The translations under genes were made by a program, and so were the position numbers. This document shows, in pieces, positions 1 to 21,643 of a DNA stretch of 64,000 bases. The stretch is from Cyanophora paradoxa CCMP329 (lineage: Eukaryota > Plantae > Glaucophyta): assembly GCA_004431415.1 (NCBI GenBank), contig QPMI01000477.1:434001-498000 (forward strand), written 5' to 3'. The notes under the pieces are model-generated. The model was not told where the DNA came from and ran no database searches. It saw nothing but the letters and a program-made list of their open reading frames with translations. Within the stretch, counting starts at the first letter, position 1. Each line of letters begins with the position of its first letter.

Positions 1-2614
1 ATCTGAGATTCATGACGACGTGGAATCTGCTTGCATTCACAGTGACAGAGCCAAGGACAGCAGCTGCTTCGTACACGGTCCGCGCGACCGAAATCGGGAC
101 CGGGTGGCTTAACCTTGTGTGGGGTGCGCCATCGTATCGGCTCGCAAACAAGGAACAGTTTTGCTCAATTCCGTGCAGAGTCCTTTGCTTTCAGTGAGGG
201 TGCGTTCGGCGGCGCGCGGCCCGCGTCGGGATCTGGATCTGAGGCCGGCGCACTCGTCTTTGGGGCGGGTTGGGCCGAACCGCGCTTCACGGTCACCCTC
301 TCCTCATCGGACGGCGCGCCACGATCGTGGGAGGGCCTCGCGGGCGCCGCGCACAACGCGACGGGTCTGCAACCCGGGGCGACGTACGGCGTGGCGGTGC
401 GGCAGGGCTGGGTCGGCCTCTCGGAGTCGTTCCTCCTCGACAGCATACTTGCCCGCACCGCGTCGCAGACGGGTGAACTTTGATATTAATCTCGCTTGAA
501 ATATCTGGGAGTTCTGCTTACTTGGACGACAGGCAACGCGACGGCGTCGGCCGTCGAGATCAGCTTGACGCTGCTCTTCTCCGACGCGGAGCTGGCGGAC
601 CTCGTCGAAGTCGATCCGGACGCGAATTCCAACGCGAATTCCAACTCCAACGCCAACTCCAACGCGAATTCGAACGGAAATTCGAAAGGCAACGCCGGCG
701 CTGGATCCAACTCGAACGCGGGCGCGAATTCGAAGGCGGAAACCGCACCAAGCGCTGTTGCCTTCACAATTACGTTCGACCTGCCCTGCTCCAGCCTTTC
801 CGTGTGCCTTTCTTATCCATGTCGGGTATTTTATATATTTATTTATATCTCCGCGCAGGGCTCCCTGGCGAAACGAATGGTGCAATCGCTGACAGAGACG
901 CTGGAGCTGGAGGCGGGGCAGCTCCGCTTCACCGGCATCCGCTGCGTCGCCGCCGCCTCACGCGCCCGCCGCCTTGCCGCCGGCGCCGCTGCGGGCGGCG
1001 ACCGCGTGCTGGCGGACTTCGTCGCGCGCGCCTCGGCGGAGGTGCAGTCGGCCGGCGCCGCGTCGACGGCGGCGGAGCTGCAGCGCATCGAAACGGCTCT
1101 GGCGGCGCCCGAAGTCGCCAAGAGCCTCGCCGAGGGCGGCGCCCCCGTCGTCCAGCTCGCCGTCAAGCCGGCGGCGACAGCGGCGCCCGCCTCCGCCCCT
1201 GCGGACTCGGCTTCTTCTTCTTCTGCGCCGACGTCGAAGCCCTCACAGACATCGTTATCGGATTCGGGCTCCGGCGGGCTGCCCCTCGCGGTCGTCGCTG
1301 GCGCGGCGGGCGGTGGAGCGGCTCTAGTGGCGGCCGTCATCGCAGCCGTCGTCCTCCGTCGCCGGCGGGCCGCCCGTCGTCGGCGTGGCTCCATTTCAGA
1401 GCTCGAGCCCCAGCCACTTTCCACAGCCGTTGCGGACGGGGCGCACAGGATGGAAGATGAAACGCCAGAGCCGGCAGGGGTTCGCTGGGCCCAGCCGTCG
1501 CCGCGCTTGAGTTTGGAGGTGAAGATCGGGGCCGGCATCGGCCGCGATCGCGAAGACGCGCCGGGTTCCGTCGAGAAAAACAGATTCGAAGCGAAGAAAA
1601 CCACAAGCGCGACGACGACGACGCCTACCGCGAAACCGACGGCGGGTCGGGGCAGGGCCCCGAATTCGCGAACGAAGCTCACGGTCCAGCTGACGCCGCC
1701 CACGGCCGCCCACGCCTTCAGCTTCGTCGCGCCCCCGCAGCAGCGAGAGTCCCCGCGAAGGCCCGGGACGCTCGATCGCGAGCTCGAAAGCGAGCCGGAC
1801 GTCGACGTCGACGTCGATCTCAAGGATCCGGAGCCCGCGACATCGCCGTCGACGGGGATCCGGATCCGGAGCTCGAGCTCGAGGAATGCACAGCCGGCTG
1901 GCCATGGCACCGCGCCCGCCGACACGGGTCCGGGCTGCATCCAATCTCTCGAAAAGTTTGACGAGCCTCCATACGCCTCCGGATCCGCCCCCGCCGCCAA
2001 TACCTCTCCAAATTCTTCGGCGTCGGTCTCGAACTCGGAACGCGCACGGAGGCTCGCGGGCAGGCTGCCGCCCCTCGCGATCGCGGTCCAGGGCCAGCTG
2101 CAGGCCAGAGTCCGGGTAGAAGCGCGAGCCCCGCTTCGGGCCCCGCGCTGCCTCCGAAGCCCACCTACGTCTCCGGCGCAGCCAACGTAAACTTAAGCTT
2201 TAACCAGGGCGCATCAGACGTCCCTGTTCTCCAGGTCGCCTCGCCCAAGTGCGCCGCCTGCATCGATTAGCACTACTCCCCGACTCGGATTCAAAATGAT
2301 CGTTATCTTTCCGCGGCAGGTACGGGGCCAACCCTCGATCGAGCGCGAGGCAGAGTCGCAGTCCGCGAGCGCAGACAAGTCGAAGCAGGGCGCTCAGCCG
2401 CGGACAGGCCGGGGAGCCGTGGCTCAACCCCGCGGCCGGGGCCTCGTTCCCCCTCCACCCAAGGGGGCGCCCCGGATCCAGCAGCAGAGTCGGTTCCAGA
2501 GCCCGCACGATCCGTCAGCCCCGGGGGCGCTCGCGCGGCCTGCAGGTTGGGGCCGAAATCGAGGCCTTGCCTGGCGCAATCGAAGTCGACGTCGCCCCTC
2601 GGATTTATATCTAA
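1..2614 (+). CDS. 3' part of the duplicated type-I surface glycoprotein (FN3-like, SEA-like, TM, cytoplasmic tail); apparent homopolymer frameshifts
   Basis: Same sequence as 15326-17943. TM segment LPLAVVAGAAGGGAALVAAVIAAVVL followed by RRRRAARRRR near 1280-1386. Single-base losses at about 2103, 2222, 2463 and 2521 relative to the other copy. Confidence 0.8.
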
Positions 2615-3429
2615 TTTGAGGCCCAAAAATTGAATCCGCAGCTCGCCGCGCCTCGTTTACTCTTGCGCCTGCAGCTGATCGTTGCAGCTGCAGCTGCTGA
2701 TCACAAATCATTGAATATGTATTAATCCTCGGATTCGAATGTAGTGCCCCCGATTGCGAATTCATCCTCGAATGATCGCAATCATGGGTTCGACGTCTGC
2801 GATCATGATCATGACGTGAAGAGAGAGGCCGCCAGCCGCGATGAAGCCTAGCTATAGGCCTAGGCCTGCCGCTGCCCGCGGCCGGCCACAGCTGCAGCGC
2901 GCGCTCTGGTCGAAGATCCAGGCCCGGGGACCCGCCCTGTTTTAGCTTTACTAAGTTAGCTAGCTTCTAACTTTAGATTTAGATTTAGATCTAACTTTTG
3001 GAACCTACTAGTACGGCCCAGCTGCAGCCCATAGCTGGGCCTGCTGCGGTGCAGCTGGCTGCACTGGCCATGGCCATATATGCATGCCATGATGGGCTGC
3101 AGCTGAGCAATATTAATGGTCTCAGGCCCCTAAATTAAAGACCGTCGGACTTCAAGGCTTGAACGGAGGACGGCGCCCGGCGGGCCGGCGGCGGCCGGCC
3201 CCCTGGACGGGTCAGCGTGCGAAATTCATGATCAGTCAGCGCTAGAGCTGGCGCGAAATTCGAGCTCCAAGCCGCGGGCCGGGGCGGCTTGATCAAGCCA
3301 TCGAGCCGCCAGGAAAAGCTCAATTGCAAGCTCAAGCCCGCCGCGCCCGATCGATATCCGAGCGCGAACGCGGCCCTAGGCCTGGGATCGCCAGAGAGCA
3401 TGCATTCGCGCCGTGGTGGCAGCGCGCCG

Positions 3430-4950
3430 ATGCTCGACTGCACGCTTGCGACTGGGGCCGCGCACGCGCTCGCCGCGCTCGTGCAGCTCGTCAGCGCCGA
3501 GTTCAGCAGCAGCGCCGTCACGATGCGCTTCTTCAGCGACTCGAGCTCCAGCCACGGACTCGAGCTGCGGGTCATCAACGACGCTGCCACGTCCTTCTTC
3601 AAGGTACCGCGCGCGGCCCGAGCTTCCATGTCAGCTCTTCCGCGCACCCCTCACGCCGCACAAGCTCAGGATGCACGACACGGCGTTCCGGCAATTCAGC
3701 ATCGACAGCCCCACAGGCCTCGTCGGTACGCGCGGCGCAAGCGCGCGCGCGCCTGTCACGTAGCCGCTCATTCGCCGTGCAGACGTCAGTGCGCTGCTCC
3801 GCACGCCTTGGGGCCTTCTTCAGCTCTTTAGTCTCTCCGCGCTCGCGCCCCCGCAGCCGTGAGCGCCGCGGACCTGGCCCGCGTCTGCGCCACGGTGCGG
3901 CGGGAGGACGACGTGCGGCTCCAGGCGGGCCCGGAGTCGCTCAGCGTCTCCGTTCGGAAAGCGGGGAAGGGATCCGCGCGGGGCCGAACCTCCGTCTACA
4001 AGCTCTCCCAGCTCGAGATCCTTGGCACCGGCCCGCGCCGCGCCGCCGCCCTGCTCCGATCCCCGCCGCGCACCCGCGCGTCTCCACTAAGACCGCCCGC
4101 TGCCCGCGCCGCGTGCAGAGCCGATGTCCATCGACGTCCCGAGCGAGTTCTTCGAGGCCGAGGCCCTCATGCGTGCGCCGCCGTACCCCGGCTCCTCCTT
4201 CGCGTACCCCCCCCGAGACCCGTCCCCCCCCCTCCAGCGGCCGACCTGCTGGGGAGGTCTTCGCGGAGCTTCGGCCCCTCTCCGATGACGTCGTGATCCG
4301 CGTCGGGCCCGCGACCGTCGAGTTCGAGGGCGCGCCGTACCCCCCACCCAATCCACCCCCATCCTCGGCCCCTTCGCCTCGCTAGCCGCCCCGGTCTGGC
4401 CCGCAGCCCTTGGAACGAACCTCTCCGGGCGCGTTTCCATCGACGTGCCTACCCCCCCCCCCCTCTCCGTATCGTACTTGATTCTCGTACCCCGCTTTGC
4501 CCGCAGGTTGGGACTGAGGTCCACGTCGCTATGTCGGGGAATCCCCCGCCCCCTGTGCACGTCAAGGCGCCCAGCCCGTACCCCCGCGCGATCGCCCATG
4601 TACCCCGCTGAGCTCTTCCCCGCCTCCCCCGTGCAGTCCCGGCTGCTGAGGGGACCCGAGCGGATGGCGAAGCTGGCTACCAACGCCCTCCTGCAGGCTC
4701 GACAGCTCTTTACATTTCTTAGCCCTCCGCCCGCCCTATTTCTGATAGCGAGCGCGCCCGTGGGCAGGTCGGGCCGGAGCGGCCGCTGGGCATCCTGTTC
4801 GAGGTACCCCCCGGGGCGGACGCGCACCTGTTCCTGGCCCCCTCTCGAGGGAGGCCGAGGGCCCCGCGGGCCCCCGTCCCCTTCCCAGGGGCCGCGCGCC
4901 ACTGGCCCGGGCCCGGGCCCGCAGGCGCAGGCGATGCCGACGGGGCGTAG
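3430..4950 (+). CDS. Divergent PCNA-fold sliding clamp, upstream copy (about 10 exons; homopolymer frameshifts, either pseudogene or consensus error)
   Basis: Duplicate of 18759-20290. Loses one G at about 4250 (ctgctggggag vs ctgctgggggag) and C/G bases in the last exon. Confidence 0.65.
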
Positions 4951-5346
4951 GACTAAGCTTGAGCGCCCGCATCGCCGCGTCGGCCAAAGGATTTTGTCAT
5001 TCAGTCAACAGACTCCAAAGCAATCCAAAGCAAGGGGGTTATGAGGCGTATGATACAGGGGCGGTCTCACTAGGTACAAAAGCTTTGCATGCGCTATTAA
5101 AAAGCAGAGGCGGGAGGAGAGGGGGTGTACATTGGACGGGCTGGTGCCGCCCAATCACGCTGCGGAGGTCTGAACTGCCGTATTTACGAAGCGGGAGGGA
5201 GGGTAACGAAGGTAAAGCAGGAAGGAAGGAAGAAGGGGGAAAGGCCGCTGCTGCTGCTGGTGGTGGTAAGGGCTAAGCCGGAGTTGGAATTCGATCCGGG
5301 GCGCGCATACGTATACGGGCCCGCCCCGGCCCGCGCGCTACAAGCA

Positions 5347-6978
5347 CTACTTGAAGCGGCGGAACTCCTGGCCGATGTAATCGCAGAGGATCGCCTTGCG
5401 GTACGGCGCCTTGAGCTTGCGCATGGCGCTCTGCTCGATCTGGCGGATGCGCTCGCGCGTGAGGCCCACTATCTCGCCGATCTCGTTCAGCGTCTTCGGC
5501 GAGCCGTCCACGAGCCCTGTACGCGCGCGTACGCCGCGGGTTAGCGGCGGGCCGCGCGAGCGGGCGGGCGGGCGGCGGGCGGCGGACCGTAGCGCATGCG
5601 GATGATGTCGCGTTCCCGCGCCTTGAGGGTCGCGAGCACGTTCTCCAGGTCTTCCCTGAGCATCGTCCGCTCCAGCTGCGCGCCGCGCGTCAGCAGCGGG
5701 AGCGCTGCCGGCGCGGCGCGGCGCGGGGCCGCTGGCGCTCGCTCGCTCGCTCGCTCGCCTGCTCGTCCGGCTGCAGGCACTCGCTCTCGATGAAGTCTCC
5801 CAGGTTGTTCCTCGCTTCGTCGAACTTGTTCGCTGAGATGGGACTCTCGAGCGCTGCGGGCCGAGACGGGCGCGCGTCAGCAGAGCTCGCGCGGCGGCGG
5901 CGCGGCCGGGCGCACAGATGGGGAGCGAGGCGGCCTGCGTGATGAACGCTAGCCGGGATACGGGGATGTTAAGCTCGTCCGCCAGTTCCTCCGGCGTTGG
6001 GATGCGCCCCAGTCTGCTCGCCAGCTGCTGCCGCCTGAGATGCGGGTGCCGAATCAGCGGGTGCGGGGCGGCGGGGCGGGCCGCGCGGGCGGGTCGCGCA
6101 CGTCTTCTTGATGAGATAGAGCGAATCGTGCACGTGGACCGGCAGGCGGATGGTCCGGCCCTGGTCCTGGAGCGACCGGAAGATGGCCTGTCGGATCCAC
6201 CACGTCGCGTACTGCGAGGGGCCCGGTTCGGCGTTCGGCGCGGCGGCCCGCACGGCGCAGAATCGCTCACCGTAAGGAACTTGAAGCCCTTGTCGGGGTC
6301 GAGAGGTAAGAAGGGGTATGGAGCTGCAAGATGACCAGGGACCTGCCGGGGAACAGGCAAGTGAAGAGGCCCCGTGACAGCAAGTTGTAAGGAGGGAGGA
6401 GGCAGAGGCGGGGCCAGAGGGCCAAGGAGCACAGGGATCGGGACCGCAGGGAATGGGGGGAAAGGAGCGTCGAGAGGGGCAGCGAGAGCAGGAATAGGAA
6501 TGGGCCCAAGGGTCACTACAGGGGCCAGAGCAGGAGGGGACGGCGCAGGAGGCGGGCGACCACCAGGGATCCCCAACGGGACATTCCCACGAACGGCAAA
6601 CTCCGCAGGATTCCGGAGGACAGAATCGATGTCACGCGAAGAGACGAGGTTGTCAGCACCGCCCGAAGAAGGAGCGCCGGACGAGTCAGAATCAGAGCTT
6701 GAACTAGAACGATGAGAACCGGTACCAGACTCTGAATCATGTGCGTCATCATCCGAGGCAGCCTGATCATCAGCGTCAGCAGCAGCCAAGCGAGCGCGCC
6801 GCTCCTCCAACAATTGCCGATCGAATCCGCGCCAATTGCAAAAACCGATATACCTATATATATCATAACATATAATTTTAGTTGCGCTCAGATTGATATA
6901 TATCCGACAGGGCGGCCGGCGATTCGCCGATTCTCCGATACACACGAACACACGGGACGCGTCTTGATTCTTCGACAT
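5347..6978 (-). CDS. Chimeric ORF: acidic/Ser/Pro-rich N-terminus fused in frame to sigma-70 regions 2.3-4.2
   Basis: Open frame from ATG 6978 (MSKNQDASR...) through ...[22 protein letters not shown], then the same spliced sigma exons ([38 protein letters not shown]) to TAG 5347. The intact copy reads [13 protein letters not shown]. Confidence 0.55.
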
Positions 6979-6980
6979 GA
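6303..6980 (-). other. Foreign segment at the duplication junction (5' part of another gene or of a transposon ORF)
   Basis: Unique in the window. No host-type GC-rich introns in 6303-6830, and codons on the minus strand are frequently T-ending (GCT/CCT/TCT), unlike flanking genes. Confidence 0.5.
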
Positions 6981-7389
6981 TTTCGGATTTGATTGATCGA
7001 ACACAGATCTGTCGCGGCCGCGATCGCGATCATCGAATCGACCGATCGCGGATCGCGATTCGCGATGATCCGCGCCGATGATCGCGCGAATTCGAATCGC
7101 GCGGCGCGCGATCCCATGATCGGATCATGATCAGTCACTGACTCAGTGAGTCGCCGTCGTCGGGCCGACGTCGGCCCGGCCCGTCGAGTCGGCCGCCGCT
7201 GTCGGCGTCGACTCGCCGATCCGATATCGATGATCCGATGATCATCGATATCGAACGTTAACTTCGGGGCGGCAACCCCAGCCCGTGCTAGCCGCAGTAC
7301 TACCGTGTGGCAGTGTGGCACTAAATTACCGCGGAATGCGCATAAATTACCGCGTTAGAAACTGGTCGAATTCGCCCAAAACTGGAATT

Positions 7390-7525
7390 GCCGTGGCGAT
7401 AAATTGCCGAAACTCTGGATTTCAAGTTTCTTCTATGGCGGCGGTTTAGCCCTACCCCTGAAATTGCCGAATTCGGCCCGGCCTGTCGGCAATATTAATT
7501 TTTTACGGCAATTTGAAGCCACGGC
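7390..7525. mobile_element. Possible small MITE-like element / inverted repeat
   Basis: GCCGTGGCGATAAATTGCCG (7390-7409) pairs with CGGCAATTTGAAGCCACGGC (7506-7525) at 17/20. AAATT(A/G)CCG is also repeated at 7323, 7344 and 7461. No clear TSD. Confidence 0.3.
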
Positions 7526-7805
7526 TAAATAAGCAAGCCTACAGTACAAGCCTGCCTTGAGTTGCTCCGCACTGAGTCCGCATGCGCAGCCGCTTTTCAT
7601 GAGCGTAGGCGTTCCAACTTCCAAGTTCGAATTCCAACTTCCAACTTCCGAACTTCCTTGATCATGCCATGATGAGAATCGATGATGAGCTCGAGATGCG
7701 CGTGCGCGACAACGAGCGGACGCCCCTGCATAATCATGAGCTCGAGGCGCTGATGATGACTGCAGCCTAGGCCTCCAGTATAGATAAATCACGTGCACTG
7801 CAGAA

Positions 7806-10800
7806 ATGCGGAGACGTCGATACGAAGGAAGCGCGGAGCCGCGATGCACATGTACGCCATCATACGCGGAGCTAGCTGTGTCTATAGTCAGCCTTATCGC
7901 CATCATTTCACTTTGCGGGAACTTCGCATGTGCTACGGGTGCGCCGCGCCCGCCTTGCGATCGGCCGCATTTACACGTTGCCCTATGATGCATATGCATA
8001 CGTATATGTATACGGCGTGCGCAACGAGTCTCGCAGCTGATAATGGAGGTGTCTGGAGAGCCGAGGACCACGAGGCACACGCGCGCGTGGAGCCAGCGGG
8101 CGGAGCCTCCATGCGAAAGGTCCTGCAGCTGCAGGCCGAAGAAGGAAGCGATCCCTATTCTGAAAACCTCTGGGGCTCCCTCGCGCTGGAGCTCGGCCCG
8201 TCGGCGGCGCAGGCGGACGGCTCGTCGGCCCTCGAGTGCGAGCGGGCGTGGGCCCCCGCCGACAGCGCCCTCGACTGCACCTTCAGCCCGCGGCGCGGCA
8301 ACGCTCCCATCGCCGTCGAGGCCGCCGCGTGCGCCGCCCGCCCTCGCGCAGGCCCCAATGCAATCGATCGACGGGCTCCCGCGCGCAGGTTTGCGGTGCA
8401 GCTGACGAGCGGCGAGGCGAGCCGGACGGTGTTCCTGTCGGGGGCGAGCGCGTCGTCGTTCGCGTTCTCGGTGCCGGTGGCGGGCGTGCTCGGCCGGGCG
8501 CAGCTGCGCGCGTACCTCGCGGCGACGGGGCGCGTCGTGGGCCGCCCGCTCGACGTCGAGGCCGTCGGTGCAGAGCCGCCCTGCGTCACAGGTCAAAATT
8601 CATCCAAGTCATTGACGATGCATATATGGGACCGCGCGCAGAGAGTCCAGACAGCACGTCGGAGCTCGACTGCGGGGCGCGGCTGCGAGCCCCCGGCCAG
8701 CCGGTCCAATGCAGTGCGACCGCCCATCATGGCGTCTCGAATCCGGACCATGTGTTGCCAGAGTGCCGACACCGCGCCGCGCAGCGCTGTACCCGCGGTC
8801 GATGGGGCGGGCGGTCGCGGTCGAGTCGGAGCGCGTGCTGGTGAGCGGCGTGAACGGGACCGCGCAGCTGCAGCTGGCGGCGGGAGGCGCGGGCGCCAGC
8901 CTGGCGGGCGCTGGAGGCGTCGGGATCACATTAATATTCTGGCCGTCCACGGGGCCGAACTCAAACACGAGTGGCGGGGCGGTGCGGGCGTTCGTGGGAT
9001 CGGCGGCGCTGTACAGCGAGTTCGTCTTCTTCGGTACGCCTGACAGGCCCCGCCCTCCTTGCCGGATGGGATATAAGTTTGCGGCGCCGCGCGCGCGAAT
9101 ATTAATGCGATCCCTGACCGTTCTTCGCCTGTGCAGAGCTGAACATGTACGTGGCCGCGAAACCGAGCCCCGCCGCTGCGGGCAGCAACACAACGGCACC
9201 GCCGACGTCGGCGACGCCCTCGCCAGTCGTGCGCCCCTGATCGTTGCGGTCGGCGACTGTGCTCGCGCCCCCTCACTCGATTCGCAGCCGTCGCCGTCGC
9301 CCGCGGGAGCGCCGGCGCCCAGCGCCACGCCCGCGCACGTCCCCGTCCCACCGCCGACGCCTGCACCAGCTCCGTCGCCAGCTGTGAACGCCTCTGTGTG
9401 CCGGGGAAATGCTGCGACGAGCTTGCTTCGACATTGAGGGAAGCATGATGCGATTTCGCGCAGGCGTCTGCAGGGGGAGACGATGCATACGCCTACCCGG
9501 GCGATCTGTGGAGCATCCTCGCGCTGGAGCTCGGCCCGTCGGCGGCGCAGGCGGACGGCTCGTCGGCCCTCGAGTGCGAGCGGGCGTGGGCCCCCGCCGA
9601 CGGCGCCCTCGACTGCACCTTCAGCCCGCGGCGCGGCAACGCTCCCATCGCCGTCGAGGCCGCCGCGTGAGCCGCCTCGCTTTCGCGCAGGCCGCCCTGC
9701 AGCCGATCGACGGCTCCCGCGCGCAGATTCGCGGTGCAGCTGACGAGCGGCGAGGCGAGCCGGACGGTGTTCCTGTCGGGGGCGAGCGCGTCGTCGTTCG
9801 CGTTCTCGGTGCCGGTGGCGGGCGTGCTCGGCCGGGCGCAGCTGCGCGCGTACCTCACGGCGACAGGGCGCGTCGTGGGCCGCCCGCTCGACGTCGAGGC
9901 CGTCGGTGCAAAGCCGCCATGCCTCACAGGCCGAGCGGCAGCCGAATCGTTGACGACGGGCCCGCGCGCAGAGAGTCCCGACAGCACGTCGGAGCTCGAC
10001 TGCGGGGCGCGGCTGCGAGCCCCCGGCCAGCCGGTCCAATGCAGTGCGCTCGCCCATCTCGAAACCGAACCGTGCGTGGCCAGAGTGCCGACACCGCGCC
10101 GCGCAGCGCTGTACCCGCGGTCGATGGGGCGGGCGGTCGCGGTCGAGTCGGAGCAGGTGCTGGTGAGCGGCGTGAACGGGACCGCGCAGCTGCAGCTGGC
10201 GGCGGGAGGCGCGGGCTCCAGCCTGACGGGCGCTGGAGGCGTCGGGATCACATTAATATTCTGGCCGTCCACGGGGCCGAACTCAAACACGAGTGGCGGG
10301 GCGGTGCGGGCGTTCGTGGGATCGGCGGCGCTGTACAGCGAGTTCGTCTTCTTCGGTACGTATACGCCCGTCAGGCGCCGCCCTCGTTGTTGGATGGGTG
10401 TTTTGCGGCGGGGCGCGCACGCGAATCCGTTCCCTCACCGTTTTGCCTGTGCAGAGATGAACATGTACATGACCGCGAAACCGAGCCCCGCCGCTGCGGG
10501 CAGCAACACAACGGCACCGCCGACGTCGGCGACGCCCTCGCCAGTCGTGCGCCCCTGATCGTTGCGGTCGGCGACTGTGCTCGCGCCCCCTCACTCGATT
10601 CGCAGCCGTCGCCGTCGCCCGCGGGAGCGCCGGCGCCAGCGCCACGCCCGCGCACGTCCCCGTCCCACCGCCGACGCCTGCACCAGCTCCGTCGCCAGCT
10701 GTGAACGCCTCTGTGTGCCGGGGAAATGCTGCGACGAGCTTGCTTCGACATTGAGGGAAGCATGATGCGATTTCGCGCAGGCTTCTGCAGGGGGAGACGA

Positions 10801-13800
10801 TGCATACGCCTACCCGGGCGATCTGTGGAGCATCCTCGCGCTGGCGCTCGGCCCGTCGGCGGCGCAGGCGGACGGCTCGTCGGCCCTCGAGTGCGAGCGG
10901 GCGTGGGCCCCCGCCGACGGCGCCCTCGACTGCACCTTCAGCCCGCGGCGCGGCAACGCTCCCATCGCCGTCGAGGCCGCCGCGTGAGCCGCCTCGCTTT
11001 CGCGCAGGCCGCCCTGCAGCCGATCGACGGCTCCCGCGCGCAGATTCGCGGTGCAGCTGACGAGCGGCGAGGCGAGCCGGACGGTGTTCCTGTCGGGGGC
11101 GAGCGCGTCGTCGTTCGCGTTCTCGGTGCCGGTGGCGGGCGTGCTCGGCCGGGCGCAGCTGCACGCGTACCTCACGGCGACAGGGCGCGTCGTGGGCCGC
11201 CCGCTCGACGTCGAGGCCGTCGGTGCAAAGCCGCCATGCCTCACAGGCCGAGCGGCAGCCGAATCATTGAACGATGGGCCCGCGCGCAGAGAGCCCGGAC
11301 AGCACGTCGGAGCTCGACTGCGGGGCGCGGCTGCGAGCCCCCGGCCGACCGGTCCAATGCAGTGCGCTCGCCCGTCTTGAAACCGAACCGTGCGTGGCCA
11401 GAGTGCCGACACCACGCCGCGCAGCGCTGTACCCGCGGTCGATGGGGCGGGCGGTCGCGGTCGAGTCGGAGCGCGTGCTGGTGAGTGGCGTGAACGGGAC
11501 CGCGCAGCTGCAGCTGGCGGCGGGAGGCGCGGGCGCCAGCCTGGCGGGCGCTGGAGGCGTCGGGATCACATTAATATTCTGGCCGTCCACGGGGCCGAAC
11601 TCAAACACGAGTGGCGGGGCGGTGCGGGCGTTCGTGGGATCGGCGGCGCTGTACAGCGAGTTCGTCTTCTTCGGTACGTATACGCCCGTCAGGCGCCGCC
11701 CTCGTTGTTGGATGGGTGTTTTGCGGCGGGGCGCGCACGCGAATCCGTTCCCTCACCGTTCTTTGCCTGTGCAGAGATGAACATGTACATGACCGCGAAA
11801 CCGAGCCCCGCCGCTGCGGGCAGCAACACAACGGCACCGCCGACGTCGGCATCGCCCTCGCCAGTCGTGCGCCCCTGATCGTTGCGGTCGGCGACTGTGC
11901 TCGCGCCCCCTCACTCGATTCGCAGCCGTCGCCGTCGCCCGCGGGAGCGCCGGCGCCCAGCGCCACGCCCGCGCACGTCCCCGTCCCACCGCCGACGCCT
12001 GCACCAGCTCCGTCGCCAGCTGTGAACGCCTCTGTGTGCCGGGGAAATGCTGCGACGAGCTTGCTTCGACATTGAGGGAAGCATGATGCGATTTCGCGCA
12101 GGCGTCTGCAGGGGGAGACGATGCATACGCCTACCCGGGCGATCTGTGGAGCATCCTCGCGCTGGAGCTCGGCCCGTCGGCGGCGCAGGCGGACGGCACG
12201 TCGGCCCTCGAGTGCGAGCGGGCGTGGGCCCCCGCCGACGGCGCCCTCGACTGCACCTTCAGTCCGCGGCGCGGCAACGCTCCCATCGCCGTCGAGGCCG
12301 CCGCGTGCGCCGCCCGCCCTCGCGCAGGCCGCCCTGCAGTCAATTGACGGCTTCCCGCGCCCAGGTTCGCGGTGCAGCTGACGAGCGGCGAGGCGAGCCG
12401 GACGGTGTTCCTGTCGGGGGCGAGCGCGTCGTCGTTCGCGTTCTCGGTGCCGGTGGCGGGCGTGCTCGGCCGGGCGCAGCTGCGCGCGTACCTCGCGGCG
12501 ACGGGGCGCGTCGTGGGCCGCTCGCTCGACGTCGAGACCGTCGGTGCGGAGCCGCCCTGCAGCTGCATCACAGACCAAATGACAGCCGAATCGTTGACGA
12601 CGGGCCCGCGCGCAGAGAGTCCCGACAGCACGTCGGAGCTCGACTGCGGGGCGCGGCTGCGAGCCCCCGGCCAGCCGGTCCAATGCAGTGCGCGCGCCCA
12701 TCTCGAAACCGAACCGTGCGTGGCCAGAGTGCCGACACCACGCCGCGCAGCGCTGTACCCGCGGTCGATGGGGCGGGCGGTCGCGGTCGAGTCGGAGCAG
12801 GTGCTGGTGAGCGGCGTGAACGGGACCGCGCAGCTGCAGCCGGCGGCGGGAGGCGCGGGCGCCAGCCTGACGGGCGCTGGAGGCGTCGGGATAACGTTCC
12901 GGCCAAGCAGCGCCGCGGGGGCGAACGCGAGCGGCGGGGCGGTGCGGGCATTCGTGGGATCGGCGGCGCTGTACAGCGAGTTCGTCTTCTTCGGTATGTA
13001 TACGCGCGTCAGGCCCCGCCATCCTGGCCATGGCCCATGGCCGGATGGGACTTAGTTTTGCGGCGGGGCGTGCTCGAATCCGATCTCTGACCGTTTTTCG
13101 CCTGTGCAGAGCTGAACATGTACATGGCCGCGAAACCGAGCCCCGCCGCTGCGGGCAGCAACGCAACGGCGCCGTCGACGTCGGCAACGCCCTCGCCCTC
13201 GCCAAGCCAGCACCTAGCTACAGAGCCGTCGGCAACGGCAAGCCCGACCGCGTCCCCATCAAGCACAGCGCTAGCAAGCCCGTCGCCGTCGCCGAGCCTG
13301 CAGGCAGAGCTGTCGGCGACGGCAAGCCCGACCGCGTCTCCGTCGAGCACAGCGCTAGCAAGCCCGTCGCCGTCGCCGAGCCTGCAGCCAGAGCTGTCGG
13401 CGACGGCAAGCCCGACCGCGTCTCCGTCAGGCACAGCGAGCCCGTCGCCGTCGCCGAGCCTGCAGCCAGAGCCATCGGCGACGGCAAGCCCGACCGCGTC
13501 TCCATCGATCACAGCGCTAGCAAGCCCGCGGCCGTCGCCGTCGCCGAGCCTGCAGGCAGAGCTGTCGGCAACGGCAAGCCCGACCGCGTCTCCGTCGAGC
13601 ACAGCGCTTGCAAGCCCGTCGCCGTCGCCGCGCCTGCAGCCAGAGCCATCGGCGACGGCAAGCCCGACCGCGTCTCCGTCGAGCACAGCGCTAGCAAGCC
13701 CGTCGCCGTCGCCGAGCCTGCAGCCAGAGCTGTCGGCGACGGCAAGCCCGACCGCGTCTCCGTCAGGCACAGCGAGCCCGTCGCCCTCGCCAAGCCTGCA

Positions 13801-16800
13801 GTCCGAGCCATCGGCGACGGCAAGCCCGACCGCGTCTCCGTCGGGCACAGTGAGCCCGTCGCCGTCGCCAAGCCTGCAGTCCGAGCCGTCGGCGACGGCA
13901 AGCCCGACCGCATCTCCAACCAGCGCAGCGAGCCCGTCGCCGCCGCCAAGCCTGCAGCTGCAGGCAGAGCCGTCGGCAACGGCAAGCCCGACCGCGTCTC
14001 CATCGAGCTTGAGCACAGCGAGCCCGTCGCCGTCGCCGAGCCTGCAGGCAGAGCCGTCGGCAACGGCAAGCCCGACCGCGTCTCCGTCGAGCACAGCGAG
14101 CCCGTCGCCGTCGGCAACAGCAAGCCCGTCGCCGTCGGCAACGGCAAGCCCGACCGCGTCTCCGTCGAGCACAGCGAGCCCGTCGCCGTCGGCAACAGCA
14201 AGCCCGTCGCCGTCGGCAACTGCAAGCCCGACCGTGTCTCCATCAAGCACAGCGAGCCCGTCGCCGTCGGCAACAGCAAGCCCGTCGCCGTCGGCAACGG
14301 CAAGCCCGACCGCGTCTCCGTCGAGCACAGCGAGCCCGTCGCCGTCGGCAACAGCAAGCCCGTCGCCGTCGGCAACTGCGAGCCCGACCGTGTCTCCATC
14401 AAGCACAGCAAGCCCGTCGCCGTCGGCAACAGCAAGCCCGTCGCCGTCGGCAACTGCAAGCCCGACCGCGTCTCCATCAAGCACAGCAAGCCCGTCGCCA
14501 TCGGCAACAGCAAGCCCGTCGCCGTCGGCAACTGCAAGCCCGACCGCGTCTCCGTCGAGCACAGCGAGCCCGTCGCCGTCGGCAGCAGCAAGCCCGTCGC
14601 CGTCGGCAACGGCAAGCCCGACCGTGTCTCCATCAAGCACAGCAAGCCCGTCGCCGTCTCCAAGCGCGAAACCGTCGGCGACGGCAAGCCCGACCGCGTC
14701 TCCATCGAGCACACCGAAACCGAGCCCCTCGCCCTCTCATCAGCTGAACGTGAAATTGAAGCCGACACCGTCATCGTCGCCACTTCCGCATCCACCAACT
14801 CCGTCCGCGTCCCCGTCGAGCGTGCCTCTCGCGAACGGTGCTTTGCTTGCTTCCTCTCTCCAAGCTTTTGCAAGCTTGGTTTTTAAATATGAACATTCTA
14901 ACTTGCTTTACGTGGTCATGGGTTGTAGTGTGTGGTCTGCAACTGCAGCCCGCATCTCTCCAGGCACGCCTTGTGGGGATCGATAAGGTCGAGGTTTCCT
15001 GGAGCCCTGCGGTCGCGGAGCCCCCGTCCGGCTGCTCTTCCCTTGTTGTCGGTCTGTTCGCGACGGGCGGCGCGTCCTCGCCTGCCGCCGCTGCTGCGCG
15101 GTGGCTCTCGGCGCCCCTTTGGACGTACAAGACGCCCGTGTTCCGCCTGTCCCTGTCGGATGCCGCTCGCATCGACGCCGGCGTGCTTTACATCGTCCGC
15201 GTTGTCGCCGAGTCGTTTGGTGGCGGCGACGGGCGTGATCCCAAGGCGCCGCCGCTCCCTTCCACTGTCTTGGAGTTTCCGCGTGCGTGGCATTTTAATT
15301 TCTGCGATAATTGCGCATGCGTTCAATCTGAGATTCATGACGACGTGGAATCTGCTTGCATTCACAGTGACAGAGCCAAGGACAGCAGCTGCTTCGTACA
15401 CGGTCCGCGCGACCGAAATCGGGACCGGGTGGCTTAACCTTGTGTGGGGTGCGCCATCGTATCGGCTCGCAAACAAGGAACAGTTTTGCTCAATTCCGTG
15501 CAGAGTCCTTTGCTTTCAGTGAGGGTGCGTTCGGCGGCGCGCGGCCCGCGTCGGGATCTGGATCTGAGGCCGGCGCACTCGTCTTTGGGGCGGGTTGGGC
15601 CGAACCGCGCTTCACGGTCACCCTCTCCTCATCGGACGGCGCGCCACGATCGTGGGAGGGCCTCGCGGGCGCCGCGCACAACGCGACGGGTCTGCAACCC
15701 GGGGCGACGTACGGCGTGGCGGTGCGGCAGGGCTGGGTCGGCCTCTCGGAGTCGTTCCTCCTCGACAGCATACTTGCCCGCACCGCGTCGCAGACGGGTG
15801 AACTTTGATATTAATCTCGCTTGAAATATCTGGGAGTTCTGCTTACTTGGACGACAGGCAACGCGACGGCGTCGGCCGTCGAGATCAGCTTGACGCTGCT
15901 CTTCTCCGACGCGGAGCTGGCGGACCTCGTCGAAGTCGATCCGGACGCGAATTCCAACGCGAATTCCAACTCCAACGCCAACTCCAACGCGAATTCGAAC
16001 GGAAATTCGAAAGGCAACGCCGGCGCTGGATCCAACTCGAACGCGGGCGCGAATTCGAAGGCGGAAACCGCACCAAGCGCTGTTGCCTTCACAATTACGT
16101 TCGACCTGCCCTGCTCCAGCCTTTCCGTGTGCCTTTCTTATCCATGTCGGGTATTTTATATATTTATTTATATCTCCGCGCAGGGCTCCCTGGCGAAACG
16201 AATGGTGCAATCGCTGACAGAGACGCTGGAGCTGGAGGCGGGGCAGCTCCGCTTCACCGGCATCCGCTGCGTCGCCGCCGCCTCACGCGCCCGCCGCCTT
16301 GCCGCCGGCGCCGCTGCGGGCGGCGACCGCGTGCTGGCGGACTTCGTCGCGCGCGCCTCGGCGGAGGTGCAGTCGGCCGGCGCCGCGTCGACGGCGGCGG
16401 AGCTGCAGCGCATCGAAACGGCTCTGGCGGCGCCCGAAGTCGCCAAGAGCCTCGCCGAGGGCGGCGCCCCCGTCGTCCAGCTCGCCGTCAAGCCGGCGGC
16501 GACAGCGGCGCCCGCCTCCGCCCCTGCGGACTCGGCTTCTTCTTCTTCTGCGCCGACGTCGAAGCCCTCACAGACATCGTTATCGGATTCGGGCTCCGGC
16601 GGGCTGCCCCTCGCGGTCGTCGCTGGCGCGGCGGGCGGTGGAGCGGCTCTAGTGGCGGCCGTCATCGCAGCCGTCGTCCTCCGTCGCCGGCGGGCCGCCC
16701 GTCGTCGGCGTGGCTCCATTTCAGAGCTCGAGCCCCAGCCACTTTCCACAGCCGTTGCGGACGGGGCGCACAGGATGGAAGATGAAACGCCAGAGCCGGC

Positions 16801-17943
16801 AGGGGTTCGCTGGGCCCAGCCGTCGCCGCGCTTGAGTTTGGAGGTGAAGATCGGGGCCGGCATCGGCCGCGATCGCGAAGACGCGCCGGGTTCCGTCGAG
16901 AAAAACAGATTCGAAGCGAAGAAAACCACAAGCGCGACGACGACGACGCCTACCGCGAAACCGACGGCGGGTCGGGGCAGGGCCCCGAATTCGCGAACGA
17001 AGCTCACGGTCCAGCTGACGCCGCCCACGGCCGCCCACGCCTTCAGCTTCGTCGCGCCCCCGCAGCAGCGAGAGTCCCCGCGAAGGCCCGGGACGCTCGA
17101 TCGCGAGCTCGAAAGCGAGCCGGACGTCGACGTCGACGTCGATCTCAAGGATCCGGAGCCCGCGACATCGCCGTCGACGGGGATCCGGATCCGGAGCTCG
17201 AGCTCGAGGAATGCACAGCCGGCTGGCCATGGCACCGCGCCCGCCGACACGGGTCCGGGCTGCATCCAATCTCTCGAAAAGTTTGACGAGCCTCCATACG
17301 CCTCCGGATCCGCCCCCGCCGCCAATACCTCTCCAAATTCTTCGGCGTCGGTCTCGAACTCGGAACGCGCACGGAGGCTCGCGGGCAGGCTGCCGCCCCT
17401 CGCGATCGCGGTCCAGGGCCAGCTGCAGGGCCAGAGTCCGGGTAGAAGCGCGAGCCCCGCTTCGGGCCCCGCGCTGCCTCCGAAGCCCACCTACGTCTCC
17501 GGCGCAGCCAACGTAAACTTAAGCTTTAACCAGGGCGCATCAGACGTCCCCTGTTCTCCAGGTCGCCTCGCCCAAGTGCGCCGCCTGCATCGATTAGCAC
17601 TACTCCCCGACTCGGATTCAAAATGATCGTTATCTTTCCGCGGCAGGTACGGGGCCAACCCTCGATCGAGCGCGAGGCAGAGTCGCAGTCCGCGAGCGCA
17701 GACAAGTCGAAGCAGGGCGCTCAGCCGCGGACAGGCCGGGGAGCCGTGGCTCAACCCCGCGGCCGGGGCCTCGTTCCCCCTCCACCCAAGGGGGGCGCCC
17801 CGGATCCAGCAGCAGAGTCGGTTCCAGAGCCCGCACGATCCGTCAGCCCCGGGGGGCGCTCGCGCGGCCTGCAGGTTGGGGCCGAAATCGAGGCCTTGCC
17901 TGGCGCAATCGAAGTCGACGTCGCCCCTCGGATTTATATCTAA
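7806..17943 (+). CDS. Large type-I cell-surface glycoprotein: signal anchor/peptide, 4 tandem units of paired Ig-like domains, ~570 aa Ser/Thr/Pro/Ala stalk, FN3-like domains, SEA-like region, single TM, long cytoplasmic tail
   Basis: N-terminal hydrophobic stretch AELAVSIVSLIAIISLCGNFACA. Spliced units contain ADGSSALEC...LDCTFSPR and PDSTSELDC...VQCTLYPR. SATASPTASPSS repeats. FN3 motifs VEVSWSP and ATGLQPGATYGVAVR. TM at about 16605-16681 followed by a basic stop-transfer. Stop TAA 17941-17943. One apparent 1-nt loss at about 10636. Confidence 0.8.
8168..13110 (+). repeat. Four intragenic tandem repeat units of about 1.32 kb (exons plus introns)
   Basis: The linker exon starts at 9464, 10781 and 12102 (periods 1317 and 1321); exons and introns are near-identical between units. 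Confidence 0.95.
13190..14730 (+). repeat. Coding minisatellite for the mucin/HRGP-like S/T/P/A stalk
   Basis: Units of about 26-28 aa (SATASPTASPSSTALASPSPSPSLQPEP) grade into SATASPTASPSSTASPSP + SATASPSP units; core DNA cggcaagcccgaccgcgtctcc. Confidence 0.95.
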
Positions 17944-20900: not shown

Positions 20901-21643
20901 GCGGGCGGGCGGGCGGCGGGCGGCGGACCGTAGCGCATGCGGATGATGTCGCGTTCCCGCGCCTTGAGGGTCGCGAGCACGTTCTCCAGGTCTTCCCTGA
21001 GCATCGTCCGCTCCAGCTGCGCGCCGCGCGTCAGCAGCGGGAGCGCTGCCGGCGCGGCGCGGCGCGGGGCCGCTGGCGCTCGCTCGCTCGCTCGCTCGCC
21101 TGCTCGTCCGGCTGCAGGCACTCGCTCTCGATGAAGTCTCCCAGGTTGTTCCTCGCTTCGTCGAACTTGTTCGCTGAGATGGGACTCTCGAGCGCTGCGG
21201 GCCGAGACGGGCGCGCGTCAGCAGAGCTCGCGCGGCGGCGGCGCGGCCGGGCGCACAGATGGGGAGCGAGGCGGCCTGCGTGATGAACGCTAGCCGGGAT
21301 ACGGGGATGTTAAGCTCGTCCGCCAGTTCCTCCGGCGTTGGGATGCGCCCCAGTCTGCTCGCCAGCTGCTGCCGCCTGAGATGCGGGTGCCGAATCAGCG
21401 GGTGCGGGGCGGCGGGGCGGGCCGCGCGGGCGGGTCGCGCACGTCTTCTTGATGAGATAGAGCGAATCGTGCACGTGGACCGGCAGGCGGATGGTCCGGC
21501 CCTGGTCCTGGAGCGACCGGAAGATGGCCTGTCGGATCCACCACGTCGCGTACTGCGAGGGGCCCGGTTCGGCGTTCGGCGCGGCGGCCCGCACGGCGCA
21601 GAATCGCTCACCGTAAGGAACTTGAAGCCCTTGTCGGGGTCGA
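15326..21643. repeat. Tandem segmental duplication, downstream copy (intact reading frames)
   Basis: Identical ORF translations at +15325..+15341 offset (e.g. 12..197 vs 15337..15522; 5396..5605 vs 20737..20946). Confidence 0.97.
18759..20290 (+). CDS. Divergent PCNA-fold (PCNA/9-1-1 family) sliding clamp, about 299 aa, 10 exons
   Basis: Spliced product MLDCTL...LELRVINDAATSFFKLRMHDTAFRQFSID...RTSVYKLSQLEILEPMSIDVPSEFFEAEALMPADLLGEVFAELRPLSDDVVIRVGPATVEFEALGTNLSGRVSI...VGPERPLGILFEVPPGADAHLFLAP. This is colinear with the PCNA pattern (KLMDLD..LGIP..Y...VKMPS.EF.RI.RDLS..GD.V.I...V.F; C-terminal P-L....YYLAP). Length fits one clamp subunit. Confidence 0.75.

What the first reader, a model, noticed from the sequence alone, without database searches (positions are those of the whole stretch)
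5347..7260. Newborn chimeric sigma factor: promoter-recognition domains fused in frame to a foreign N-terminus, transit peptide lost
Seen: the duplication breakpoint at 6302/6303 falls just before DPDKGFKF. The foreign ORF from ATG 6978 runs in frame into it (...[17 protein letters not shown]), and all downstream sigma exons and introns are retained. A GATC-rich, promoter-like block with TGACTCAGTG (7139) sits just upstream. Known: sigma regions 2.3/2.4 and 4.2 melt/recognise -10 and -35 elements; regions 2.1-2.2 provide the main core-RNAP contact; plastid import needs the presequence. Inference: if expressed, the product would be a non-plastid protein with an acidic/Pro-rich (activation-domain-like) N-terminus on bacterial HTH DNA-binding domains, i.e. 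an endosymbiont-derived sigma being repurposed. In-frame fusion alone has a 1-in-3 chance probability.
Basis: partly seen in the sequence, partly recalled or inferred. Interest (0 to 1): 0.8.

Follow-up and report, generated by a model that had tools for sequence, protein, structure and literature searches.

The report
Truncated duplicate of algal sigma gene
In the alga Cyanophora paradoxa, a very recent (or possibly mis-assembled) duplication of about 15 kb left a second, beheaded copy of a plastid sigma-factor gene joined in frame to unrelated neighbouring DNA; nothing shows it is expressed and it could not work as a sigma factor, so it is most likely an ordinary by-product of duplication.

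Summary
Window 1-6302 is repeated at 15326-21643, and the match ends at 6302/6303 inside a sigma-factor exon. A frame from ATG 6978 runs into ...[10 protein letters not shown], and all downstream sigma exons and introns are identical to the parent.

- **Organism and gene:** Cyanophora paradoxa, contig tig00020816. The parent is the nuclear cyanelle sigma factor (g14180.t1 = GenBank BAB87264).
- **Age of the duplication:** the copies differ by 0 substitutions and 15 G/C homopolymer indels. It is either extremely young or an assembly artefact, so no selection or "repurposing" can be read from it. It runs off the window's left edge; the simplest model is a 15.3 kb tandem duplication with 6302/6303 as its junction.
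- **What the product would be:** the copy keeps only the equivalent of E. coli sigma70 ~420-613. Regions 1.2, 2.1, the core-binding helix and the presequence are gone.
- **The upstream part:** a 528-nt block with strong codon periodicity but atypical codon usage (GC3 0.49 against 0.91) and no relatives anywhere.
- **Existing annotation:** the public annotation already has a 245-aa model here (g14175.t1) with a different, weak 5' exon.
- **Expression:** no evidence could be obtained.

The scan holds no earlier independent note on this. Verdict: ordinary truncated duplicate, low interest.

The parts
1..6302 (.). Copy 1 of the duplicated block, cut by the left edge of the window. It carries the 3' part of a large membrane-protein gene, intervening genes and the 3' two-thirds of the sigma gene.
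   Evidence: Self-BLAST gives 1-6302 = 15326-21643 with 0 mismatches and 15 gaps. All differences are G/C homopolymer lengths and copy 1 is always shorter.
15326..21643 (.). Copy 2 of the duplicated block. It continues without a break into the 5' part of the intact sigma gene.
6301..6304 (.). Duplication junction (6302/6303), inside the exon that encodes sigma region 2.1/2.2.
   Evidence: The alignment of the two copies ends at 6302.
5347..6303 (-). 5'-truncated sigma gene. Exon pieces are 6303-6271, 6211-6102, 6034-5916, 5853-5759, 5675-5588 and 5516-5347 (stop TAG 5349-5347). Introns are 59, 67, 62, 83 and 71 nt, and one is GC-AG.
   Evidence: Boundaries. Pfam exon by exon: Sigma70_r2 tail, r3 (E 6.7e-8), r4 (E 2.2e-11). 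The translation is identical to the C-terminal part of the public models P0121 and P0001.
6304..6831 (-). Coding-like orphan block in phase with the sigma exon. It has an acidic/Ser-rich half and then a 35% Pro half.
   Evidence: Period-3 p~4e-11, with T at codon position 3 at ~0.44. GC3 is 0.49 against 0.91 in the sigma exons. It is the largest such block in the window. No Pfam family; no relatives in the word search, the exhaustive search of 1.84e9 representatives, or viral, GTDB and metagenome contigs. Composition.
6832..6978 (-). It holds the only in-frame ATG (6978) and an AT-rich, TATA-like patch (6905-6835). It is probably non-coding.
   Evidence: No periodicity (p 0.58). GC 0.37-0.49. 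Sequence and ATG list.
7143..7245 (-). First exon of the public gene model g14175.t1 (MIIGSS...DSL), inside the GATC-rich block.
   Evidence: tblastn of P0121 residues 1-35 maps to 7245-7141. Translation. No coding periodicity. No other protein shares it.
6324..7142 (-). 5' intron of model g14175.t1 (GT...AG, 819 nt).
   Evidence: It is about 10 times longer than the five sigma introns (59-83 nt).
6981..7260 (.). GATC-rich, palindrome-rich block with TGACTCA at 7139.
   Evidence: 14-15 GATC against 0.9 expected; the next densest 260-nt window has 7. Short inverted repeats at 7025-7086, 7161-7178 and 7222-7253.
20688..22623 (-). Intact parental sigma gene (g14180.t1 / GenBank BAB87264), with presequence, regions 1.2, 2, 3 and 4.
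   Evidence: P0122 residues 1-102 map at 100% to 22623-22318. Pfam r1.2, r2, r3, r4. Best solved relatives are cyanobacterial SigA 8h3v, 9dvs and 8gzg.
8100..17626 (+). Large type-I membrane-protein gene (approximate start). It has 4 x ~1.32 kb units, an S/P/A/T-rich stalk, FN3-like ORFs, and a TM segment plus tail. It crosses 15325/15326, which shows the duplication continues left of the window.
   Evidence: The window starts inside the other copy (ORF 115-483 = 15440-15808).

Best explanation
The feature is the junction of a very young direct duplication in the Cyanophora paradoxa nuclear genome. The duplicated segment ends inside the exon for sigma region 2.1/2.2 of the nuclear gene for a cyanelle SigA-type sigma factor. 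So one copy (20688-22623) is intact, and the other (5347-6303) is a 5'-truncated fragment that abuts whatever DNA lies at the other end of the duplicated unit.

The simplest model is a tandem duplication of a 15,341-bp unit (6303-21643), whose first copy starts about 9 kb left of the window.

The abutting DNA is the upstream neighbourhood of a large membrane-protein gene. It contains a 528-nt coding-like block of atypical codon usage that happens to be in phase with the sigma exon (a 1-in-3 chance).

The fragment has lost the parental promoter, the presequence, regions 1.2 and 2.1, and the core-binding helix. Any product could therefore neither enter the cyanelle by the usual route nor bind RNA polymerase core as a sigma factor. 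At most it would carry sigma domains 3 and 4 behind a disordered leader.

It is most likely a functionless by-product, a gene relic too young to have decayed.

Shown: the anatomy, identity of the copies, domain content, and absence of relatives for the upstream block. Inferred: the tandem model, the lack of function, and the lack of import.
For: - **Duplication:** 0 substitutions over 6.3 kb, with the match ending at 6302.
- **Extent:** the alignment starts at window base 1, and a plus-strand membrane-protein gene runs unbroken across 15325/15326. So the duplication extends left of the window.
- **Locus is duplication-prone:** an older 6.1 kb tandem duplication (98.65% identity, 76 mismatches) and intragenic tandem arrays lie in the same window.
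- **Parent identity:** EukProt C. paradoxa g14180.t1 and GenBank BAB87264.
- **Breakpoint position:** about 41 of 71 in Sigma70_r2.
- **What is kept:** the truncated product aligns only from 8h3v_G residue 198, which is E. coli sigma70 ~420.
- **What is lost:** 93 columns conserved at >=90% among 26 full-length sigmas lie left of the breakpoint, including the [10 protein letters not shown] stretch.
- **Fold prediction (AlphaFold2):** leader residues 1-45 have pLDDT below 50, the sigma-2 remnant 50-63, and domains 3 and 4 mostly 74-91.
- **Presequence:** the parental N-terminus [10 protein letters not shown] fits the cyanelle rule of Phe within the first 10 residues; the candidate N-termini of the fragment do not (PMC4510345).
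- **Upstream block:** no relatives in any search.
- **Public model:** its 5' exon lacks coding periodicity and needs an 819-nt intron, where the gene's own introns are 59-83 nt.
Against: - The upstream block has strong coding periodicity in exactly the open frame (p~4e-11), and the frame is longer than chance. A functional 5' gene part, with a promoter, may therefore have been captured, which would favour expression of a chimera.
- All sigma splice sites and the 3' end are intact, and there are no disabling mutations.
- A BRAKER model trained on RNA-seq exists at the locus.
- The left end of the duplication and the original context of the upstream block could not be seen.
- Read support for the junction could not be checked, so an artefact is not excluded.
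Confidence: 0.6

Rival explanations
1. Assembly artefact. The genome has one copy of this segment, and the Canu v1.0 contig contains a false duplication, so the junction at 6302/6303 does not exist in the cells or exists only in a minor subpopulation.
For: - Zero substitutions between the copies. The only differences are 15 homopolymer undercalls, all in copy 1, one of which truncates an ORF that is intact in copy 2. That points to a poorer consensus in copy 1.
- The assembly was made from RSII reads with Canu v1.0 and two Quiver rounds.
- 34.7 Mb of the assembly is flagged as duplicate relative to the earlier 70 Mb assembly, and 18.5% of short reads have several best placements (PMC6704402).
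- No independent contig of this locus exists in any collection searched.
Against: - The junction is inside a contig with no Ns.
- By my understanding of Canu (inference, not tested), contig paths normally need several overlapping reads.
- The 15:0 asymmetry can also arise for a real exact duplicate (inference). Reads align best to whichever copy is already more accurate, so that copy is polished and the other is starved of coverage; the paper fills zero-coverage areas from the PacBio reference.
- The same window holds an older, clearly real tandem duplication and tandem arrays.
Confidence: 0.22
2. One reading: a truly expressed newborn chimeric protein. Transcription starts upstream of 6978, translation runs from ATG 6978 through the acidic and Pro-rich block into the sigma exons, and the result is a non-plastid protein with sigma domains 3 and 4 (HTH) behind a disordered, activation-domain-like N-terminus.
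For: - The fusion is in frame and the frame is open for 242 codons.
- The 6304-6831 block has coding periodicity in that frame.
- All sigma splice sites and the 3' end are intact.
- Sigma domains 3 and 4 are predicted to fold.
- From established knowledge, N-terminally truncated sigma70 fragments can bind promoter DNA without core (Dombroski et al. 1992, cited from memory).
Against: - No transcript or peptide evidence was obtainable.
- The head with the only in-frame ATG is AT-rich, TATA-like and not periodic.
- The annotation pipeline, which had RNA-seq, did not call this ORF here or anywhere else: the exhaustive search found no protein containing it.
- Codon usage is far from that of the sigma exons.
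- The sigma-2 domain is broken.
- Zero divergence means no evidence of selection.
Confidence: 0.12
3. The public model g14175.t1 is the true transcript. A short exon at 7245-7143 is spliced over an 819-nt intron to 6323, giving a 245-aa protein with a 42-residue leader on the truncated sigma.
For: - The model exists in the published BRAKER1/Augustus annotation, which used RNA-seq.
- The intron has a GT...AG and the phase fits.
Against: - Exon 1 has no coding periodicity and lies in a palindromic GATC block.
- The intron is about 10 times longer than the gene's other introns.
- No other protein shares the exon.
- The leader is predicted disordered.
- In my experience (inference), gene predictors often add such an exon to give a truncated gene a start codon.
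Confidence: 0.05

Closest known systems
Cyanophora paradoxa nuclear-encoded RNA polymerase sigma factor (GenBank BAB87264 / UniProt Q8S9C8; gene model tig00020816_g14180.t1)
   Same: This is the parental gene, present intact in the same window. The truncated copy is identical to it, base for base, from the codon for D of DPDKGFKF to the stop, introns included.
   Different: The copy lacks the ~70-residue presequence, region 1.2, the non-conserved spacer, region 2.1 and the [16 protein letters not shown] helix. About 222 of 427 residues are missing. It also has unrelated DNA upstream.
Cyanobacterial group-1 sigma factor SigA (solved in holoenzymes 8h3v, 9dvs, 8gzg)
   Same: The parent matches it over regions 1.2 to 4.2. 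The fragment matches 8h3v_G 198-389 at E 2.4e-64.
   Different: The fragment starts at the equivalent of residue 198 of 390, so the N-terminal half of the sigma-2 domain is absent. By established knowledge of sigma70 region 2.2, that half includes the main contact with the beta-prime clamp helices.
Young chimeric genes and gene relics made at the junctions of tandem segmental duplications (general phenomenon, known from flies, plants and mammals; cited from general knowledge)
   Same: A duplication breakpoint inside a gene leaves a truncated copy fused to the DNA at the other end of the unit. In-frame fusion occurs by chance in one third of cases.
   Different: Here neither transcription nor the identity of the 5' partner is established, and the copies are so similar that even the reality of the duplication needs read-level confirmation.
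Public gene model tig00020816_g14175.t1 (EukProt EP00741_P014697, 245 aa)
   Same: It covers the same truncated sigma copy and crosses the same junction (…TPYPFLPL|DPDKGFKF…).
   Different: I found no mention of the model or its chimeric nature in the assembly paper's text or stored supplements.

Membership tests
Sigma-70 family (group 1/2) sigma factor | Region 1.2 present | tested here: not met
   The parent has PF00140 (E 3.7e-6). The truncated copy has no sequence for it.
Sigma-70 family (group 1/2) sigma factor | Complete region 2 (sigma-2 domain), including the 2.1/2.2 core-binding helix | tested here: not met
   The breakpoint is at about profile position 41 of 71 of PF04542, and only the tail (positions 52-71 plus 10 residues) remains. 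The alignment to sigma70 starts at ~420. 93 conserved columns lie left of the breakpoint. The remnant has pLDDT 50-63.
Sigma-70 family (group 1/2) sigma factor | Region 3 present | tested here: met
   PF04539 E 6.7e-8 on the exon 6033-5917. pLDDT 79-91.
Sigma-70 family (group 1/2) sigma factor | Region 4 (HTH for the -35 element) present | tested here: met
   PF04545 E 2.2e-11 on exon 5514-5350, and E 9e-4 on the preceding exon. pLDDT 62-90.
Nuclear-encoded cyanelle (plastid) protein of Cyanophora | N-terminal presequence with Phe within the first ~10 residues | tested here: not met
The parent starts [10 protein letters not shown] and meets the rule. The rule is from PMC4510345, where it is frequent but not absolute. 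No localisation predictor was available.
Expressed chimeric gene born by duplication | In-frame junction between parts of two genes | tested here: inconclusive
   The fusion is in frame and the 3' partner is certain. The 5' partner is a coding-like but orphan, unannotated block.
Expressed chimeric gene born by duplication | Transcript and protein spanning the junction | not testable with these tools
   No C. paradoxa reads, transcripts or contigs are in the searchable collections. The stored supplements hold no rows for g14175 or g14180.
Real segmental (tandem) duplication | Independent read or assembly support for the junction; a second copy of 6303-15325 left of the window | not testable with these tools
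   The window ends inside copy 1 and the contig is not retrievable. Indirect support: a gene continues across 15325/15326.
Decayed pseudogene | Disabling substitutions, frameshifts or stops in the retained coding part | tested here: not met
   5330-6302 is identical to the parent. This is expected if the copy is very young.

The most novel reading that the evidence does not exclude
The duplication is real and has captured the promoter and first coding exon of a neighbouring, unannotated gene with atypical codon usage. Cyanophora would then express an in-frame chimera: a disordered acidic and Pro-rich N-terminus on bacterial-type sigma domains 3 and 4, retained outside the cyanelle. That would be a snapshot of an endosymbiont-derived DNA-binding module at the very moment it becomes available to the host nucleus or cytosol.
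Probability: 0.08. Interest if true: 0.55.

Novelty: new member of a known kind. Interest (0 to 1): 0.2.

Why it matters
If real and expressed, it would be a rare zero-age example of gene birth by duplication-fusion involving an endosymbiont-derived transcription factor. It would be testable by simple RT-PCR.

As it stands it matters mainly as a caution. The C. paradoxa proteome used in comparative studies (EukProt EP00741) contains a 245-aa "sigma factor" (g14175.t1) that is a truncated duplicate with a doubtful 5' exon. It also contains a parental model (g14180.t1) that lacks its presequence. Exact duplicates in this assembly carry uncorrected homopolymer errors in one copy.

Tried and rejected
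- **Relatives of the upstream ORF.** All searches came back empty, so no parent gene, transposon or viral origin could be named:
  - Pfam.
  - Word search over 299-950 aa with the junction region.
  - Exhaustive phmmer against 1.84 billion representatives.
  - ESM Atlas features, recognition value 1227, no usable hit.
  - Viral, GTDB and metagenome contig scans.
- **A second protein sharing the public model's 5' exon** (P0121 residues 1-45, 135-429 aa range): none. This test of the tandem model was uninformative.
- **Fetching the contig left of the window or independent assemblies.** P0121 is not on record. A 37-nt exact pattern from the shared exon/intron is absent from metagenomes.
- **Expression tables.** The stored supplements of PMC6704402 do not contain g14175 or g14180.
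- **Literature on Cyanophora sigma factors and on BAB87264.** Nothing relevant in the library.
- **Triplet-repeat origin of the periodicity.** Rejected: no tandem arrays in 6303-6831.
- **Antisense-of-a-plus-strand-gene explanation.** Rejected: all plus-strand frames there carry 4-6 stops.
- **Earlier scan notes by words.** Nothing.
- **A slip of my own.** In one search the first slices were one base out of codon phase. The periodicity statistic is unaffected, but the "position" labels shift by one; the in-phase slice (6567-6304) and one search give T3 of about 0.43-0.44.
- **Spliced protein.** I did not build one from the exons. Exons were searched one by one by reference, and full-length comparisons used the public models P0121, P0001 and P0122. 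Pooling exon codons in scripts served for base-composition counts only.
Full report
**What is there**

The window is GC-rich nuclear DNA of the glaucophyte Cyanophora paradoxa, contig tig00020816. A search with the parental reading frame returned the EukProt protein EP00741_Cyanophora_paradoxa tig00020816_g14180.t1. Its 90% cluster also holds GenBank BAB87264 / UniProt Q8S9C8, "RNA polymerase sigma factor [Cyanophora paradoxa]".

Self-comparison shows that window 1-6302 is repeated at 15326-21643: 6318 aligned columns, 0 mismatches, 15 gap openings. The match ends exactly at 6302. There are no Ns in the window.

On the minus strand the repeat carries the 3' part of the sigma gene. The parental copy reads ...[19 protein letters not shown]|[10 protein letters not shown]. 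The truncated copy reads ...[11 protein letters not shown]|[10 protein letters not shown].

From the junction downstream, six exon pieces are present: 6303-6271, 6211-6102, 6034-5916, 5853-5759, 5675-5588 and 5516-5347. The five introns are 59-83 nt, and one is GC-AG. All are identical to the parent.

A mechanical ORF runs from ATG 6978 to the sigma stop (543 codons).

**The parental gene**

Pfam finds regions 1.2, 2, 3 and 4 in the parental frame. The closest solved relatives are cyanobacterial SigA chains in holoenzyme structures (8h3v, 9dvs, 8gzg).

The GenBank protein's residues 1-102 map at 100% identity to 22623-22318. The true start is therefore [12 protein letters not shown]..., which matches the cyanelle transit-peptide pattern of a Phe within the first ten residues. 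Examples in PMC4510345 include MEVAFAVPLA and METAFATAAL. The public model g14180.t1 starts at an internal Met and lacks this presequence.

**What the truncated copy retains**

The breakpoint lies at about position 41 of 71 of Pfam Sigma70_r2. The public model of the truncated copy aligns to 8h3v_G only from residue 198, and to E. coli sigma70 from residue 422. It therefore keeps the equivalent of sigma70 ~420-613.

It has lost the presequence, region 1.2, region 2.1 and the helix [16 protein letters not shown]. By established knowledge of sigma70 region 2.2, that helix carries the main contact with the beta-prime clamp helices. I found no citable passage on this in the library, so it rests on my own knowledge.

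In an alignment with 26 full-length sigmas, 93 columns conserved at 90% or more lie left of the breakpoint. AlphaFold2 on that alignment gives these confidence values:

| Part of the 245-aa model | pLDDT |
|---|---|
| Leader (residues 1-45) | below 50 |
| Sigma-2 remnant | 50-63 |
| Domain 3 | 79-91 |
| Domain 4 | 62-90 |

Any product would therefore not be a sigma factor. At most it would display sigma domains 3 and 4.

**How old is the duplication, and is it real?**

All 15 differences between the copies are 1-2 nt length differences in G/C homopolymers, and copy 1 is the shorter one in all 15. One of them shortens an ORF in copy 1 (496-2190, 564 codons) that is 601 codons long in copy 2. 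By contrast, another duplication in the same window (51892-57889 and 58006-64000) has 76 substitutions and 5 gaps.

The assembly was made from RSII reads with Canu v1.0, two rounds of Quiver, and a majority-rule Illumina correction in which zero-coverage areas were filled from the PacBio sequence (PMC6704402). The differences therefore look like uncorrected consensus errors, and the two copies are effectively identical.

That leaves two readings: a very recent duplication, or a false duplication. The 15:0 asymmetry hints at weaker support for copy 1. It can also arise for a real exact duplicate, because reads align best to whichever copy is already more accurate (inference).

For reality speak:
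- The junction is inside a contig.
- The locus shows an evident tendency to tandem duplication.

For caution speak:
- 34.7 Mb of the assembly is flagged as duplicate features.
- 18.5% of short reads have several best placements.

I put the artefact at about 0.2. It cannot be settled here, because no independent C. paradoxa contigs or reads are in any searchable collection.

**Extent of the duplication and origin of the "foreign" DNA**

The alignment begins at window base 1, so it is cut by the window edge. A large plus-strand gene for a type-I membrane protein runs from about 8.1 kb to 17626 and crosses 15325/15326 without a break. It has four 1.32 kb units, an S/P/A/T-rich stalk, FN3-like ORFs, and a TM segment with a tail. 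The window starts inside the other copy of that gene.

The simplest model is a tandem duplication of the 15,341-bp unit 6303-21643, with 6302/6303 as the novel junction. The gene-model numbers fit this: g14175 for the truncated sigma and g14180 for the parent, five models per unit.

Under this model the "foreign" DNA is simply the left end of the unit. It is native Cyanophora DNA upstream of the membrane-protein gene, whose original copy should lie about 9 kb left of the window. This is inferred, not shown.

**The upstream reading frame**

It is not uniform.

*The core (6304-6831).*
- It has strong three-base periodicity in exactly the open frame (p about 4e-11), with T at about 0.44 of third positions.
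- The frame is longer than dinucleotide shuffles predict (P about 0.02 for the core and 0.001 for all 225 codons).
- It contains no tandem repeats, and the plus-strand frames carry stops.
- It is the largest T3-rich periodic open block in the window.
- So it looks like a present or former coding exon. However, its codon usage (GC3 0.49) is far from the sigma exons (GC3 0.91).
- It encodes low-complexity sequence: an acidic/Ser-rich half and then a half with 35% Pro.
- It has no relatives anywhere, not even in the Cyanophora proteome.

*The head (6832-6978).* It holds the only in-frame ATG. It is AT-rich with TATA-like runs and shows no periodicity.

It starts at 7245 in the GATC block, splices from 7143 over an 819-nt intron to 6323, and enters the sigma frame eight codons before the junction. 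Its first exon has no coding periodicity and no other protein shares it. The intron is ten times the size of the gene's other introns. I regard that exon as a likely predictor artefact (inference). The models come from BRAKER1/Augustus with RNA-seq, so the model is a prediction, not a cloned transcript.

**Most likely explanation**

The feature is a real, zero-age segmental duplication, probably tandem. Its junction leaves a 5'-truncated sigma gene fragment next to unrelated local DNA that is in frame by chance. The fragment is most likely functionless (confidence 0.6).

Rivals:
- False duplication in the assembly (0.22).
- The public model as the true transcript (0.05).

The in-frame fusion, the loss of the presequence and the retention of the HTH domains are right. 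But the sigma-2 domain is broken, "repurposing" has no support at zero divergence, and expression is untested.

**Comparison with what is known, and novelty**

The parent is a known gene, and the truncated copy is already in the public proteome as an undiscussed model. Truncated and chimeric copies at duplication junctions are a well-known class. This is a new member of a known kind and of low interest, unless transcription across the junction is shown.

The most novel reading not excluded is a newly born, expressed non-plastid protein with sigma domains 3 and 4. I give it about 0.08.

**Method note**

They were searched one by one by reference, and full-length comparisons used the public models.

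Noticed in passing
window 51892-57889 and 58006-64000: A second tandem duplication with a unit of about 6.1 kb, 98.65% identical (76 mismatches, 5 gaps). It is clearly older than the sigma duplication and runs to the right edge of the window.
   Followed up: no
window 8179-13197 and 13184-14820 (+ strand): Four tandem units of about 1.32 kb (88-94% identical) are followed by 24/30/78-nt repeats that encode an S/P/A/T-rich stalk. They lie inside one large membrane-protein gene with no Pfam match.
   Followed up: partly
window 6981-7260: Palindrome-rich block with 14-15 GATC sites (0.9 expected), the densest in the window. It contains CGATCG, GCGATCGC-like and GTCGAC motifs. Its function is unknown; a promoter, a transposon end or a methylation target are all possible.
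   Followed up: partly
window 7300-7660 (minus strand reading): Repeated CGGCAATTT / CGGTAATTTA motifs and a TTCCAAC x 6.6 microsatellite lie in the lower-GC stretch between the coding-like block and the membrane-protein gene.
   Followed up: no
window 5347-6978 and 20688-22277 (minus strand): One reading frame stays open through all five sigma introns (543 and 529 codons). This is a reminder that long ORFs in this 65-70% GC genome are weak evidence of coding.
   Followed up: no
P0122 (GenBank BAB87264) against window 20688-22623: The GenBank protein differs from the genome-encoded one by a short frameshift-like stretch (SSETSSTKA against SANKFDEA), P>L in DPDKGF and N>D in TLNEIG. The cause is either a strain difference or old sequencing errors.
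   Followed up: no
window 22410-22623 (minus strand): The public model g14180.t1 starts at an internal Met ([10 protein letters not shown]) and omits the 72 N-terminal residues present in BAB87264, including the transit-peptide start.
   Followed up: partly
window 5676-5758 (minus strand): One sigma intron is GC-AG (GCGAGC...CAG).
   Followed up: partly
window 2559-2858 = 17861-18190, 37239-39490 and 62141-62530 (minus strand): Further stop-free, periodic blocks with T-rich third positions and GC3 of 0.38-0.50. They could be antisense frames of plus-strand genes or a class of low-GC3 genes.
   Followed up: no
window 2102 (copy 1) against 17428 (copy 2): A 1-nt homopolymer shortfall in copy 1 cuts the membrane-protein tail ORF from 601 to 564 codons. 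Exact duplicates in this assembly appear to keep uncorrected indels in one copy, which can create false frameshifts in gene models.
   Followed up: partly
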